DNA of 64,000 nt, taken from positions 260,469 through 324,468 of the IMG/VR virus record IMGVR_UViG_3300044712_001255; one strand, 5' to 3'. Shown here piece after piece: positions 2,372 to 56,093 of the stretch. Numbering within the stretch: position 1 is the stretch's first letter; each line of letters opens with the position of its first letter. A program made the translations under genes and the position numbers. Under the pieces are notes generated by a model that saw only the letters and a list, made by a program, of their open reading frames with translations, was not told the DNA's origin and made no database searches.

Positions 2372-2400
2372 GTGTAATACCTGACTCAACGTGATAGGCT
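2372..2400 (+). promoter_or_regulatory. GTGTA-N18-TAGGCT promoter
   Basis: Recurrent motif, here upstream of ORF 2411. Confidence 0.6.
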
Positions 2401-2410
2401 TGTCCTAGGC

Positions 2411-2788
2411 ATGGACACCACAACATACGTTTATATCGCGCTTGGTGCAGTCGCCACAGGAACATCATTGTGGTGGGTAATTCGAACAATTCGTCGTCGA
2501 TTGACGCGTCCTGCTGGTGGTTCACAGTCGGTGAACGTGAAACAGCTGCGTGTTCGACTTACAACGTTGACTGGCGAGATTTTTGATATCTCGTTTGAAG
2601 GCAAGGCATTCTACATCAATGACACAATCTGGATGCAGACTGCTAAAGAAATTTTCAATGATTGGCGTGACGCAGGCGAACACGGTTTGTTTCGTGTTTC
2701 TCGTAACCAATGGATTGGCGCGCAGAACGTAAAGGAACTTCTCTTGGTGAAAGAGAGTGATCTTTTTATTGACGTGCCGTACTCTTGA
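2411..2788 (+). CDS. Hypothetical protein with N-terminal TM helix
   Basis: 125 aa ORF with a hydrophobic N-terminus. Confidence 0.7.
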   Translation: MDTTTYVYIALGAVATGTSLWWVIRTIRRRLTRPAGGSQSVNVKQLRVRLTTLTGEIFDISFEGKAFYINDTIWMQTAKEIFNDWRDAGEHGLFRVSRNQWIGAQNVKELLLVKESDLFIDVPYS

Positions 2789-2790
2789 CG

Positions 2791-2819
2791 GTGTACAATC
2801 GCACACCGTGTATTATAAT
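2791..2819 (+). promoter_or_regulatory. GTGTA-N18-TATAAT promoter
   Basis: Consensus -10, upstream of the sigma operon. Confidence 0.7.
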
Positions 2820-2850
2820 AGCAACCCAAAAAGAACAAGAAGGATAGAAA

Positions 2851-3237
2851 ATGGCAAAGAAGCTGAAGAAGAACGCAAAGTCCGAGACCGTTGTCGAGAA
2901 CGTGGCCGCCGTCACTGTTGACGCTGCCCCTGCAAACCTGTTTGAGGCGTTCATTGATCTGAGTGATCCTGAGCTGTCTCAGGCAATCGAGCGGCTTGAG
3001 GCTGAGCGTAACAGCTGCCTGGCGCATCGAGAGGATCCTATGGAGATTGAGATTGAGAAGTGTTTCGCTCAGCGTGAGTGGAGACTGCGTGCTGAGCGTT
3101 GGAAGGCGCATTGCGCGTATCTCGATGCAGACGCAGAGTCTCTTCGAGAGGATCAGTACCCGATCGCAGACCTCGATAATTGGGAGTTCGTCTCAATTTG
3201 CAACGGTTCGCGAGCGCCTCGCGTTCAGCGCGCCTAG
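2851..3237 (+). CDS. Hypothetical protein
   Basis: 128 aa ORF with SD aagga. Confidence 0.75.
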   Translation: MAKKLKKNAKSETVVENVAAVTVDAAPANLFEAFIDLSDPELSQAIERLEAERNSCLAHREDPMEIEIEKCFAQREWRLRAERWKAHCAYLDADAESLREDQYPIADLDNWEFVSICNGSRAPRVQRA

Positions 3238-3248
3238 GATTTCTTGAC

Positions 3249-53655: not shown

Positions 53656-53661
53656 GTAAAT

Positions 53662-53691
53662 ACGGTAATTCCTTCCTACCACATTGTACAC
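53662..53691 (-). promoter_or_regulatory. GTGTA-N19-TACCGT promoter (leaderless uORF)
   Basis: The uORF ATG is 6 nt after the -10. Confidence 0.55.
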
Positions 53692-54129
53692 TTAAATGTT
53701 GTTCAACAAGTAAGCAACGAATCCTGTGTTGCACAATGCCATTGGGCGTTGCGCCTGAATGAGAGAAATGATTTCTTGAGCTGACAAGTGAGTTAGCTCA
53801 CGAAGCGCAAATGCAGTCACCATGCCAGAACGATTCTGACCAGCCATGCATGTCACAAGAACATTTCTACCTTCACGAACGTGTTCTGCTACGTGTATGC
53901 CTGCCTTGCGCCACGTACTTACAAAACGTGTGATTCGATCTGGGCGTGGGTCATCATCGCCAGGTGCGCCAATCACAGTAATGTTGGTGTATGCGCTGGC
54001 AGACTGCCATTCAGCAGCTGCCAATACTACGACATGAAATCCTGCCTTGCTAAGAGCATCGCCCTCAGGTGGAAGTCCTCCCTGATACAGGTGCTCAATG
54101 ATTTTATTGGCGTGGTATTGATATCCCAT
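53692..54129 (-). CDS. Dual-specificity protein phosphatase
   Basis: VLVTCMAGQNRS (CX5R). Confidence 0.88.
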   Translation of the reverse strand: MGYQYHANKIIEHLYQGGLPPEGDALSKAGFHVVVLAAAEWQSASAYTNITVIGAPGDDDPRPDRITRFVSTWRKAGIHVAEHVREGRNVLVTCMAGQNRSGMVTAFALRELTHLSAQEIISLIQAQRPMALCNTGFVAYLLNNI

Positions 54130-54325
54130 GAAATCACTGTATCATAAGGCACGTGAATTGCATTATCTCCAAAATCACTATATTTGGTTGGCCAAAATTT
54201 GCGCTTCTCGATGAGAAATACCATGCTTTTCTTGAAGTTCTTTATACACTTGTTCACGTATGCTATCAGTTGTGTATTTGTGTGAAATATCTCGTATTAA
54301 TGGATTCTTTTTCGTTGTTCATGTA

Positions 54326-55087
54326 TCATCTCTCTTGCGATTTTCGAAAAATTGTTGCTTCTCTTTCAATATCAATTCCTACTTCTGCGAATCTTTGTGC
54401 ATTGAAAATTTCAAGTCGAACATTAGGATTAGATTTTTTAATGAATGAGATTTTCTCACGTTGTATGTCATCAAAAAATGCGCCTTTTACGTCATAATAC
54501 GTGTTAGTTTCTGGTACAAAGAAATCAGGATAGTAAGATCGCATAATACCTTTTGCGTCACTATAAGCGATACGACCGCGATGCGCAATATATTTCACGC
54601 CAATTTTGTCAAGATATTTAGCAAAAATCACTTCCCAAGTGCCTTGTAATTTCACAATGTCGTTATCTGGAGTTTGATGATCATACCATCTACAACGTCC
54701 AGTTTTAACACCATCATATTTGCCATCCGCCCATGCTTTTCTTAACATCTTAGATATTTTTGCTCGATAGTTTGGATCTGATGTGATACGATTACGTCGA
54801 GTTTTTGACATCTTGGCGGCAACGTCATGATTTTTCATACCATTGCTATCGCCAGAATTGATCTTTCGTTCTTTTGAAGTCTTTGAAATTTTTTCTACCC
54901 AATCTGGGTGGGTTGCCTTTGATCGATACGTTTTGCCAAACGCAGGATTTCCTGCGCCTGACATTCGTTTAGAACAACGCTGATTTGAACAATGTCTACT
55001 ACAACATTTACGTTCAAGATCATGTCTTGGCAACAACATGATCTTACCGCATATTTCACAAGATTTCTCAAATCTTGGAGATTTCAT
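54326..55087 (-). CDS. Putative homing endonuclease (NUMOD3-like plus PD-(D/E)xK)
   Basis: GAGNPAFGK; QGTWE...YYPDFFV...YYDVKG. Confidence 0.75.
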   Translation of the reverse strand: MKSPRFEKSCEICGKIMLLPRHDLERKCCSRHCSNQRCSKRMSGAGNPAFGKTYRSKATHPDWVEKISKTSKERKINSGDSNGMKNHDVAAKMSKTRRNRITSDPNYRAKISKMLRKAWADGKYDGVKTGRCRWYDHQTPDNDIVKLQGTWEVIFAKYLDKIGVKYIAHRGRIAYSDAKGIMRSYYPDFFVPETNTYYDVKGAFFDDIQREKISFIKKSNPNVRLEIFNAQRFAEVGIDIEREATIFRKSQER

Positions 55088-56058
55088 TTCTTACTCACGG
55101 CACGACCTATAAGTTTCTCCCAATCACGTTGTGGTCGAACTTCAAGATTTTTCTCCCATGCGCCTCGCATAACCTTTGGATCAACCCCCAATTCTTTTGC
55201 TAAGAACATTAGTGCGTTCATGTCTTTAATGAAGCAACTTCCCGCAAAACCCTTCGCCGGCAACCCAGTGTCATCAGCAGGCATAGGACCAGGAACCTTC
55301 CAATGCGAAGTGCCTAAACGATCATCATACAATGCATATTCAATGCATTTGTCATAATCGATATTTGCGCCCTTAGTGTCTAACGCTTCACAAATTTGAT
55401 AAAATTCATTCGCTAATGAAACCTTTGTAGCAAGGTGCACATTAGTAATGTATTTCACCATCTCTGCAGTTGTGCTAGACGTCTTAATGATTGGAACGTC
55501 TGGGTATGCGATTTCGTATACTTGTTTTACTACATTAATTTGTGGACGAGGACCGCCAAGAATAATTCGATTCTGATGAATGAAATCTTCTATAGCGCTC
55601 GCTTCACGTAAAAATTCTGGGTTGAATATCACTGCAAGTCTATCACCATACTTCTTATTCCAAGATTCGGTCGATCCAGGTGGGCACGTAGACTTAATGA
55701 CTATGATTCGTTTGTCATTTATGCTACGGGGTTCGATATCGTAGAACTCCCTCAACACACTATCAACGATCGATAGATCAGCTGCGCCATCTTCATACAT
55801 AGGCGTTGGTACTGCCACAAAGTAGACACCAGCAAAGTTGATGTTAGGATCTTCCACTTCTACACGTTTGACTAACGCAGCTACGCTAAGTTTACCTCCT
55901 TCTAGAGGATATCCCTTTTCAATCTTACCGCGACCTTGAGAATCAACACACTTGCCAGCAGCATCAAATGTGTACACATCAAATGCATGACACATACCGA
56001 TTGATAGAGAACCACCAACAAATCCTTGCCCAATGACGGCAATCGACTTCTTAATCAT
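55084..56058 (-). CDS. UDP-glucose/GDP-mannose dehydrogenase family protein
   Basis: GQGFVG, VPTP, IKST, NPEFLRE, AEMVKY, GFAGSCFIKD. Confidence 0.92.
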   Translation of the reverse strand: MIKKSIAVIGQGFVGGSLSIGMCHAFDVYTFDAAGKCVDSQGRGKIEKGYPLEGGKLSVAALVKRVEVEDPNINFAGVYFVAVPTPMYEDGAADLSIVDSVLREFYDIEPRSINDKRIIVIKSTCPPGSTESWNKKYGDRLAVIFNPEFLREASAIEDFIHQNRIILGGPRPQINVVKQVYEIAYPDVPIIKTSSTTAEMVKYITNVHLATKVSLANEFYQICEALDTKGANIDYDKCIEYALYDDRLGTSHWKVPGPMPADDTGLPAKGFAGSCFIKDMNALMFLAKELGVDPKVMRGAWEKNLEVRPQRDWEKLIGRAVSKK

Positions 56059-56064
56059 GCGATG

Positions 56065-56093
56065 ATTGTATCAATTGACATTTTGATGTACAT
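56065..56093 (-). promoter_or_regulatory. ATGTA-N18-TACAAT promoter (leaderless)
   Basis: ATG 56058 is 6 nt after the -10. Confidence 0.55.

What the first reader, a model, noticed from the sequence alone, without database searches (positions are those of the whole stretch)
2372..56093. Recurrent non-canonical promoter GTGTA-N18-TAnnnT, often giving leaderless mRNAs
Seen: a spacer of exactly 18 nt at 2372, 2791, 5318, 7008 (GTGCA), 10904, 16472, 17026, 22461 and 56093 (-, ATGTA), and 19 nt at 20055, 24195 and 53691 (-). All lie immediately upstream of genes. In five cases (5353, 16507, 17061, 53655, 56058) the ATG is exactly 6 nt after the -10, where a transcription start would fall. Genes at 54129 and 50311 show the same -10/ATG spacing. 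Inference: this is a phage-specific -35 element (not TTGACA) combined with systematic leaderless translation.
Basis: partly seen in the sequence, partly recalled or inferred. Interest (0 to 1): 0.7.

Follow-up and report, generated by a model that had tools for sequence, protein, structure and literature searches.

The report
Jumbo-phage promoters making leaderless mRNAs
An uncultured 324-kb soil phage and its whole clade of giant relatives use about a hundred promoters with their own upstream signal (GTGwA instead of TTGACA), most of which start the messenger RNA at the ATG itself, and the clade also carries a sigma factor that lacks its upstream-reading helix plus a separate small protein that has that helix.

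Summary
GTGTA-N18-TAnnnT occurs 11 times in the window against 1.6 expected, and 33 times in the 324-kb phage record, with a sharp peak at spacer 18. A set chosen only by TAnnnT-N6-ATG recovers the same upstream element, G-35 T-34 G-33 w A-31, plus G-14 and C-1. About 100 sites exist genome-wide and most are leaderless. The architecture recurs in 30 of 31 related jumbo-phage contigs (GC 35-61%) and before 16 of 22 DNA-ligase orthologues, while the spacers have diverged. TTGACA-type promoters are not enriched, and T at the first position is almost absent.

The clade encodes an RpoD-like sigma (window 3249-4064) that always ends before the region 4.2 recognition helix. It also encodes a conserved 86-aa four-cysteine protein with a sigma-4.2 helix-turn-helix and an invariant RMRICQIE helix. 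My best reading is a two-piece phage sigma that reads these promoters. This step is inferred: the complex prediction gave only weak support.

No RNA data were found, so transcription starts are not mapped. A separate late promoter class (ATAGTTA-like) and a gp55-like late sigma (46771-47598, minus strand) also exist. I rate this a new variant of known kinds.

The parts
2372..2400 (+). Promoter GTGTA-N18-TAGGCT. Predicted start about 2407, ATG at 2411 (about 4-nt leader), 125-aa protein.
   Evidence: score 18.3.
2791..2819 (+). Promoter GTGTA-N18-TATAAT. Predicted start about 2826. A leader with a Shine-Dalgarno sequence runs to the ATG at 2851. The operon continues into the sigma gene.
   Evidence: score 15.2.
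3249..4064 (+). Phage RpoD-like sigma factor, 271 aa. It has regions 1.2, 2, 3 and 4.1 and ends before the region 4.2 recognition helix.
   Evidence: The same truncated end is found in all 13 aligned relatives.
5318..5346 (+). Promoter GTGTA-N18-TAGACT. The ATG of the DNA ligase gene (5353-6681) lies 6 nt after the -10, so the mRNA is leaderless.
   Evidence: score 19.3. The arrangement is kept in 16 of 22 ligase orthologues.
7008..7036 (+). Promoter GTGCA-N18-TAGAGT. Predicted start about 7043, ATG at 7071 (leader present), DUF2201 metallopeptidase/VWA-like protein.
   Evidence: score 19.1.
10904..10932 (+). Weak candidate GTGTA-N18-TAACCT. No clear downstream gene; the tRNA region follows.
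   Evidence: score 11.8, within the chance range.
16472..16500 (+). Promoter GTGTA-N18-TATCAT with a leaderless ATG at 16507 (96 aa).
   Evidence: score 16.6.
17026..17054 (+). Promoter GTGTA-N18-TAAGTT with a leaderless ATG at 17061 (137 aa).
   Evidence: score 19.0.
20055..20084 (+). Promoter GTGTA-N19-TAGATT. Predicted start about 20091. Leader with GGAGG before the ATG at 20103.
   Evidence: score 11.5 with the 19-nt spacer model.
22461..22489 (+). Promoter GTGTA-N18-TATAAT. Predicted start about 22496, 2 nt before tRNA-Gly (22498). It would drive the Gly-Gly-Leu-Leu tRNA cluster.
   Evidence: score 15.0.
24195..24224 (+). Promoter GTGTA-N19-TAATGT. Predicted start about 24231, ATG at 24235 (about 4-nt leader), Rnl1-type RNA ligase.
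   Evidence: score 17.3.
56065..56093 (-). Promoter ATGTA-N18-TACAAT with a leaderless ATG at 56058 (UDP-glucose dehydrogenase-like, 324 aa).
   Evidence: (score 15.4).
53662..53691 (-). Doubtful site GTGTA-N19-TACCGT. The ATG at 53655 opens only 7 codons. The site overlaps a late-type GTATTTA.
54136..54141 (-). -10-like TACAGT 6 nt before the ATG at 54129 (phosphatase-like, 145 aa). The upstream element is only ATGCA at the wrong spacing.
50318..50323 (-). -10-like TATTGT 6 nt before the ATG at 50311 (glycosyltransferase). No GTGwA element.
46771..47598 (-). T4 gp55-like late sigma factor (275 aa), the likely reader of the separate ATAGTTA-type late promoters.
   Evidence: phrog_234, E 3.8e-7.
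42782..42788 (-). Late-type motif ATACTTA before the baseplate wedge gene (40932-42767). It belongs to the second promoter class, not to the finding.

Best explanation
These are real sigma-70-family promoters of a clade of uncultured jumbo phages. Their layout is GTGwA at -35 to -31, in register with TTGACA; then 18 nt (19 in most relatives); then G-14 G-13, an extended -10 that reads TGG in relatives; then TAnnnT at -12 to -7; then six bases ending in C. Transcription starts on the A of the ATG in most cases, so the mRNA has no leader and no Shine-Dalgarno sequence and must be translated as a leaderless message. The promoters drive early and middle functions: a 24-kb block of small genes outside the window, DNA and RNA ligases, tRNA clusters and the sigma operon. 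Structural and lysis genes use a different single-element motif, ATAGTTA-like, probably read by a gp55-like sigma.

The RpoD-like protein at 3249-4064 would supply regions 1.2 to 4.1 and read the extended -10 and the -10. The separate 86-aa four-cysteine protein (genome 12232-12492, minus strand) would supply the region 4.2 helix-turn-helix and read GTGwA.

Shown: the motif, its enrichment, its spacing, its conservation across the clade, the truncated sigma, and the free-standing sigma-4.2 protein and their co-occurrence. Inferred: the transcription start, leaderless translation, which proteins read the promoter, and that the two proteins bind each other.
For: Enrichment and spacing.

The element was recovered without conditioning on it. 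In 53 sites chosen only by TAnnnT-N6-ATG, an ORF and a non-coding upstream region, T-34 occurs in 38 of 53, G-33 in 38 of 53, A-31 in 32 of 53, G-14 in 38 of 53 and C-1 in 37 of 53. In 200 such sites from relatives the same columns stand out.

A weight-matrix scan finds 101 sites at score 13 or more, against 8.6 in shuffles. Of 125 sites at score 12 or more, 56 have a start codon opening an ORF of at least 40 codons 4-9 nt after the -10; many others have an ATG there that opens a shorter ORF.

Clade conservation: in pooled relatives the top 5-mers upstream of TAnnnT are GTGTA at 19 (89 against 10.9), GTGCA at 19 (77 against 9.5) and GTGAA at 19 (73 against 19.4), with no TTGAC signal. A groundwater relative with GC 59% has 14 such leaderless promoters in 20 kb. 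16 of 22 ligase orthologues keep the arrangement although their spacers are unrelated.

Proteins: the sigma lacks the 4.2 helix in all relatives. The small protein passes the Pfam Sigma70_r4 cut-off (32.8 bits, cut-off 24.1) and matches phrog_351 positions 690-726, while the sigma matches positions 500-697. Its RMRICQIE helix and four cysteines are invariant. Its model has pLDDT 91.7, and nearly all of its best PDB matches are sigma region 4. Both genes are present in all 4 records that are at least 90% complete.

Complex prediction gave weak support. The ipSAE score was 0.51 and the best of 3 controls 0.00. That mark was reached by 58 of 80 solved complexes and 2 of 110 mismatched pairs, but scores of 0.60 or under came from only 7 of those 80 solved complexes and from both mismatches that passed. 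The runs agree in at least 90% of contacts and the partner's pLDDT is at least 73. My own alignments were used, so these counts hold only roughly.

No AsiA or MotA homologue was found. A gp55-like sigma accounts for the other promoter class.
Against: No RNA data exist for this phage: no RNA run was listed, so no start site is mapped.

The sigma gene itself lies behind GTGTA promoters, both here (2372, 2791) and in a relative (L014 promoter at 7553, sigma at 10001). Something else must therefore make the first sigma. That fits reading by the host sigma at least as well.

From my own knowledge of the genetics, the arginine of sigma-70 assigned to G-33 is a cysteine in the small protein, yet that G is invariant in these promoters. 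The reading register therefore cannot simply be copied from sigma-70.

The two genes are far apart and on opposite strands. The complex score is only weak support. The small protein could instead partner the gp55-like sigma, as gp33 does in T4. The host is unknown, so a host primary sigma with unusual specificity is not excluded.
Confidence: 0.45

Rival explanations
1. Host primary sigma reads the whole promoter. These would be phage early promoters used by the unmodified host holoenzyme, as in T4, whose early promoters have their own flavour. The extended -10 (TGG-TAnnnT) would do most of the work and GTGwA would be a tolerated variant of TTGACA. The phage RpoD-like sigma would serve another purpose.
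For: The element shares T-34 and G-33 with TTGACA and sits in the same register. The extended -10 is strong. The sigma gene lies downstream of such promoters, which gives a natural order of events. Dense arrays of small genes each with its own promoter look like immediate-early regions. No other abundant class of host-type promoters exists in the genome.
Against: T at the first position, the most typical base for a primary sigma, occurs in 1 of 82 promoters and is at background level in relatives, while G is enriched about fivefold. A-31 replaces the usual C. The same element is kept in phages with GC from 35 to 61%, which probably infect different hosts. This reading leaves the conserved truncated sigma and the sigma-4.2 protein without a promoter class.
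Confidence: 0.25
2. Sigma appropriation by an activator. A sigma (host or phage) reads only the -10 and extended -10. GTGwA is bound by a phage DNA-binding activator that replaces region 4 contacts, as MotA/AsiA do at T4 middle promoters. The small sigma-4.2 protein may be that activator acting on host sigma, or it may be unrelated.
For: The promoter is a bipartite motif with a normal -10 and a foreign element near -33, which is the T4 middle-promoter logic. The phage sigma has no -35-reading helix.
Against: No AsiA or MotA C-terminal domain homologue was found in the 86%-complete record. The element sits at the canonical -35 distance, not at -30. No other conserved candidate protein was identified.
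Confidence: 0.15
3. Chance or compositional artefact. GTGTA and TAnnnT would co-occur by base composition or through repeated DNA.
For: Four of the 11 exact window matches lie inside genes, about the chance number.
Against: No shuffle of 100 reaches 11 matches. The spacer peak is sharp. The spacers between the elements are unrelated in sequence. The motif is conserved across the clade.
Confidence: 0.02

Closest known systems
Leaderless genes with a TANNNT -10 motif a few bases upstream of the ORF in Deinococcus-Thermus (PMC12340547). From my own knowledge, also Actinobacteria and the middle and late genes of Thermus phage phiYS40.
   Same: A TAnnnT hexamer sits at a fixed short distance before the ATG, there is no Shine-Dalgarno sequence, and many genes are affected.
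   Different: Here the -10 is joined to a strict, non-canonical -35 element and an extended -10. The system belongs to a phage clade rather than a host phylum. Other genes of the same phage use AGGAG-type Shine-Dalgarno leaders.
T4 middle promoters (MotA box plus sigma-70 -10, with AsiA remodelling region 4). This comparison rests on my own knowledge.
   Same: A normal -10 is combined with a phage-specific upstream element that replaces TTGACA, and the promoters drive pre-late genes.
   Different: The element is GTGwA at the -35 position, not TGCTT at -30. No MotA or AsiA homologue was found. The phage brings its own RpoD-like sigma.
Two-subunit (split) sigma factors: T4 gp55/gp33, SPO1 gp33/gp34, B. 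subtilis SigO-RsoA, Tn916 Sig7-8 (bioRxiv 10.64898/2026.10.01.756105).
   Same: Region 2 and region 4 functions lie on separate polypeptides. The elements are phage or mobile elements. Positive feedback is possible because the sigma gene lies behind its own promoter type.
   Different: The large piece here is a near-complete group-1-like sigma (regions 1.2 to 4.1) cut inside region 4. The small piece carries a four-cysteine domain. No experiment supports the pairing.
The 'minimal sigma factor' with a single helix-turn-helix and the RpoD-like sigmas noted in group 2 jumbo phages (PMC7824862).
   Same: The same two kinds of protein are found in T4-core jumbo phages that lack their own RNA polymerase.
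   Different: In the passages I searched, that survey ties neither protein to a promoter motif and mentions neither the missing 4.2 helix of the RpoD-like protein nor leaderless mRNAs.

Membership tests
Bipartite sigma-70-family promoter | -10 hexamer TAnnnT with A at position 2 and T at position 6 | tested here: met
   In the 221-245 kb cluster 14 of 48 promoters have C at -7.
Bipartite sigma-70-family promoter | Upstream hexamer 17 +/- 1 nt from the -10 | tested here: met
   The sharp peak at 5-mer spacer 18 corresponds to a hexamer spacer of 17. In relatives the spacer is 19, i.e. 18 for a hexamer.
Bipartite sigma-70-family promoter | Upstream hexamer resembles TTGACA | tested here: not met
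   The consensus is GTGwAn. T at the first position occurs in 1 of 82 sites and TTGAC is not enriched.
Bipartite sigma-70-family promoter | Transcription starts 6-8 nt after the -10 | not testable with these tools
   No RNA run was listed. The only support is indirect: a C-1/A+1 preference.
Leaderless mRNA | The 5' end of the transcript coincides with the start codon | not testable with these tools
   Inferred from the ATG lying exactly 6 nt after the -10. There are no RNA data.
Leaderless mRNA | AUG start codon and no Shine-Dalgarno sequence | tested here: met
   A+1 T+2 G+3 in 38, 38 and 39 of 48 cluster promoters. The -10 occupies the place where a Shine-Dalgarno sequence would lie.
Split (two-subunit) sigma factor | Region 2 and the region 4.2 helix-turn-helix lie on separate polypeptides | tested here: met
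Split (two-subunit) sigma factor | The two genes co-occur across relatives | tested here: met
   Both genes are present in all 4 records that are at least 90% complete and in 8 of the 10 large relatives' records searched, plus this phage itself.
Split (two-subunit) sigma factor | The two proteins bind each other and RNA polymerase | tested here: inconclusive
   Complex prediction gave weak support only: score 0.51, best control 0.00. Binding to polymerase was not tested.
Split (two-subunit) sigma factor | Both proteins are required for transcription from the cognate promoter | not testable with these tools
   This needs in vitro transcription or genetics.
T4 MotA/AsiA middle promoter system | MotA box TGCTT near -30, and MotA and AsiA genes | tested here: not met
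   The motif differs in sequence and position. No AsiA or MotCF match was found.
T4-type late transcription (second promoter class only) | A gp55-like sigma and a single A/T-rich element about 10 nt before the start, upstream of structural genes | tested here: met
   phrog_234 match, E 3.8e-7. An ATAGTTA-like motif lies 4-10 nt before the ATG of tail sheath, endolysin and baseplate genes.

The most novel reading that the evidence does not exclude
A primary-type (RpoD-like) sigma factor has been split inside region 4. The -35-reading helix-turn-helix lives on a separate four-cysteine protein with an invariant RMRICQIE helix that specifies GTGwA. This two-piece sigma is a core feature of a large, uncultured clade of 300-370 kb phages. 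It runs an orthogonal regulon of about 100 promoters whose messages are almost all leaderless, so the phage bypasses both host promoter recognition and Shine-Dalgarno-dependent initiation.
Probability: 0.4. Interest if true: 0.8.

Novelty: new variant of a known kind. Interest (0 to 1): 0.62.

Why it matters
If the reading is right, a widespread group of giant soil and groundwater phages takes over host transcription with its own modular sigma and a private -35 code. It would also express its early programme from leaderless messages. That would tie together three things so far seen only separately: phage sigma factors, split sigmas and leaderless regulons.

It also gives a concrete promoter grammar for annotating these uncultured genomes. 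Gene starts can be fixed by the -10, and temporal classes can be told apart by motif. It points to a compact orthogonal promoter and sigma pair that could be tested in vitro without culturing the phage. Finally, it raises the question of how the host, or the phage, makes leaderless translation efficient.

Tried and rejected
- Near-identical phages: none in the phage collection. The best cultured match to the sigma is 37% identical.
- RNA evidence: no RNA run was listed. The only holders are two rhizosphere DNA runs.
- A single-protein scan of viral contigs found nothing. The alignment-based scan worked.
- The word-index search for the small protein found only 5 relatives. The profile search found 675 at E up to 0.001 and 114 at E up to 1e-10.
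- The first fold of the small protein, from 9 sequences, was unusable (pLDDT 50). It was redone with 69 sequences.
- Host assignment through MAG bins gave scattered taxa that are not credible as hosts.
- Canonical sigma-70 promoters are not enriched.
- No MotA or AsiA was found. The phrog_12791 late sigma was also absent.
- TAA recoding, suggested by a tRNA with anticodon TTA, is not supported.
- A palindromic CRP-like site was considered and rejected because the columns upstream of -36 carry no information.
- The 'moraphage' paper (PMC12619734) was checked: it concerns a different lineage and contains no promoter analysis.

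
Full report
**What the window is.** The window is the last 64 kb of a 324,468-bp IMG/VR virus record (G000:C1:260469-324468) with GC 46.6% and a CheckV completeness of 86%. It carries myovirus-type baseplate and tail-fibre genes, DNA and RNA ligases, 30 tRNA genes and a block of sugar-modifying enzymes. Two rhizosphere DNA runs hold it. Nothing in the phage collection is close to it at the DNA level.

**Check of the observation.**
- GTGTA-N18-TAnnnT occurs 11 times in the window against 1.59 expected, and no shuffle of 100 reached 11.
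- In the whole record it occurs 33 times, against 5 for the reversed control pattern.
- A scan of spacers from 10 to 26 gives a sharp peak at 18 (33, background about 6) and a shoulder at 19.
- Among all 5-mers at all spacers upstream of TAnnnT, GTGTA at 18 ranks first and GTGAA at 18 third. TTGAC is not enriched.
- The textbook sigma-70 scan of window 1-20000 finds 29 sites against 25.8 +/- 4.3 expected.

**Leaderless spacing.** TAnnnT-Nx-ATG, where the ATG opens a coding ORF of at least 50 codons, peaks at x=6 (73, background about 25). I selected 53 sites only on that spacing, an ORF and a non-coding upstream region. Their upstream columns show G-35, T-34 (38 of 53), G-33 (38 of 53), w-32, A-31 (32 of 53), G-14 (38 of 53) and C-1 (37 of 53). 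So the upstream element reappears without being asked for. It lies in register with TTGACA: the 5-mer spacer of 18 equals a hexamer spacer of 17. The pyrimidine at -1 and the A at +1 fit a start on the A of the ATG.

- The ATG at 53655 opens only 7 codons.
- Site 22461 drives a tRNA cluster, with the predicted start 2 nt before tRNA-Gly.
- Site 10904 is weak.
- Sites 2372 and 24195 would give leaders of about 4 nt.
- Sites 2791, 7008 and 20055 have ordinary leaders with a Shine-Dalgarno sequence.

**Extent in the genome.** A weight matrix finds 101 sites at score 13 or more against 8.6 in shuffles. A block at 221-245 kb, outside the window, holds about 50 of them. Nearly every small gene there (54-320 aa) has its own promoter of the form GTGnn-N18-GGTATACT-nAGACC-ATGG. 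Elsewhere the form is GTG(T/C)A-N18-(T)GG-TAnnnT. T at the first position occurs in 1 of 82 promoters.

**Relatives.** The phage encodes an RpoD-like sigma at window 3249-4064. Its closest homologues (50-61% identity) are all 257-309 aa, several sit on contigs of 300-370 kb, and some come from groundwater samples. No cultured phage is close; the best is 37% identical.

I pooled 31 distinct related IMG/VR loci, about 570 kb with GC from 35 to 61%.
- The top 5-mers upstream of TAnnnT are GTGTA at 19 (89 against 10.9), GTGCA at 19 (77 against 9.5) and GTGAA at 19 (73 against 19.4). TTGAC is flat.
- The N6-ATG peak is present (353 against about 240). It is absent from more distant sigma-bearing phage contigs.
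- One groundwater relative (GC 59%) shows 14 promoters of the form GTGwAA-N18-cTGG-TAGGAT-nAGATC-ATG in 20 kb.
- Before the DNA ligase orthologue, 16 of 22 distinct relatives keep GTGnA, N18-20, TAnnnT, N5-8 and an in-frame ATG, while the spacer sequence is unrelated.
- In 200 sites from relatives chosen only by the N6-ATG rule, the same columns stand out, including T-15 G-14 G-13 and C-1. At the first position only G is enriched: 256, against 68 for T, which is background.

This is a phylogenetic footprint of a working promoter, and of a reader that is not a typical primary sigma.

**Candidate readers.** The sigma aligns with RpoD and SigA structures through regions 1.2, 2, 3 and 4.1. It stops at '...FPITQDEIDNLDEGRGLT', before the region 4.2 recognition helix. 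All 13 aligned relatives end the same way, so this is not a truncation artefact.

An 86-aa ORF at genome 12232-12492 (minus strand) passes the Pfam Sigma70_r4 cut-off over profile positions 19-50. It matches phrog_351 at positions 690-726, directly after the stretch matched by the sigma (500-697). Its four cysteines and the helix RMRICQIE are invariant in relatives. The family has 114 cluster representatives at E up to 1e-10, most of them about 70-110 aa. A model built from 69 sequences has pLDDT 91.7. Nearly all of its best PDB matches are sigma region 4, with 29-39 aligned columns (mostly 30-37), rmsd mostly 0.5-2.1 A, and E-values that are not significant because the matches are so short. 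Both genes occur in all four records that are at least 90% complete, and in eight of the ten large records of relatives that I searched.

Complex prediction of the two proteins gave weak support. The ipSAE score was 0.51 and the best of 3 controls 0.00. That mark was reached by 58 of 80 solved complexes and 2 of 110 mismatched pairs, but scores of 0.60 or under came from only 7 of those 80 and from both mismatches that passed. The runs agree in at least 90% of contacts and the partner's pLDDT is at least 73. My own alignments were used, so the counts hold only roughly.

No AsiA or MotA C-terminal domain was found.

**A second promoter class.** Upstream regions without the first motif are enriched for ATAGTTA, ATACTTA and CTATTTA (7-mer ATAGTTA: 10 against 0.6). 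The motif lies mostly 4-10 nt before an ATG. It stands before two tail-sheath paralogues, an endolysin and the baseplate wedge gene of the window, and it is kept before the orthologues of gene 4865 in relatives. A gp55-like late sigma sits at window 46771-47598, minus strand. So the late class has its own candidate sigma. That leaves the RpoD-like sigma to the GTGwA class.

**Interpretation.** I am confident (about 0.85) that these are working promoters that give leaderless or near-leaderless transcripts. I think it likely (about 0.75) that the -35 element is read by a phage-encoded protein and not by a canonical primary sigma. My specific model is a truncated sigma plus a free sigma-4.2 protein acting as a two-piece sigma, and I put it at about 0.45.

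The main difficulty is order of events. The sigma gene itself lies behind GTGTA promoters, both here and in a relative. The first sigma must therefore come from somewhere else. Options are basal use of the extended -10 by host holoenzyme, proteins carried in the virion, or a feedback loop like that described for Tn916 Sig7-8 (bioRxiv 10.64898/2026.10.01.756105).

A second difficulty concerns the recognition helix. By my own knowledge of the genetics, the arginine of sigma-70 assigned to G-33 is a cysteine in the small protein. The small protein might also partner the gp55-like sigma, as gp33 does in T4.

**Comparison with what is known.**
- TANNNT motifs placed a few bases before ORFs and giving leaderless mRNAs are established in Deinococcus-Thermus (PMC12340547). 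From my own knowledge they are also known in Actinobacteria and in Thermus phage phiYS40.
- Split sigmas are known from T4, SPO1, SigO-RsoA and Tn916.
- Jumbo phages with RpoD-like and 'minimal' sigmas were catalogued in PMC7824862.
- I did not find described: the GTGwA element, its link to a sigma cut inside region 4, or the scale of the leaderless regulon in this uncultured clade.

I therefore rate this a new variant of known kinds.

Noticed in passing
window 52539-52611 (-): A tRNA with anticodon TTA (ochre-suppressor type) sits among the sugar-modification genes. TAA still ends 113 of 396 called genes, and reading TAA as sense does not lengthen ORFs more than TAG does, so there is no sign of recoding.
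   Followed up: partly
window 22461-22498 (+): The promoter places the predicted start (22496) 2 nt before the mature 5' end of tRNA-Gly, so the tRNA operon would have almost no 5' leader to be removed.
   Followed up: no
window 2173-2179 (-), 4853-4859 (+), 21708-21714 (+), 22216-22222 (+), 42782-42788 (-); genome-wide elsewhere: A second promoter-like motif [AC]TA[GCT]TTA lies 4-10 nt before ATGs. It stands before tail sheath, endolysin and baseplate genes and is kept in relatives. It is probably a T4-style late class that also gives very short leaders.
   Followed up: partly
window 46771-47598 (-): A T4 gp55-like late sigma factor (phrog_234, E 3.8e-7). It is 275 aa, longer than T4 gp55 (185 aa).
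   Followed up: partly
genome 221,000-245,000 (outside the window): About 50 promoters lie in 24 kb, one per small gene, with a near-identical -10 and discriminator (GGTATACT-nAGACC-ATGG). 14 of 48 have C instead of T at -7, which is unusual for a sigma-70-type -10.
   Followed up: partly
genome 8197-8225 (-) and genome 12492-12560 (-): The only textbook TTGACA-N17-TACAAT in the 324-kb record is at 8225 (-). The small sigma-4.2 gene is preceded by TTGTA-N19-TACATT and a Shine-Dalgarno leader, with T rather than G at the first position. These may be entry points for host holoenzyme.
   Followed up: no
window 47908-63965 (-): A block of two glycosyltransferases, a UDP-glucose dehydrogenase-like gene, an aminotransferase and two nucleotide-sugar epimerases. 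It may serve sugar modification of DNA or of a surface structure.
   Followed up: no
window 800-22840 (+): 29 tRNA genes lie on the plus strand, interspersed with small ORFs and promoters. They cover 12 amino acids, with several isoacceptors each.
   Followed up: no
L200 (NHDW01000006.1, 305,838-bp contig filed as a Methylococcaceae MAG): A contig of jumbo-phage size that carries the small sigma-4.2 protein is filed inside a bacterial MAG. It is probably a mis-binned phage genome of this clade.
   Followed up: no
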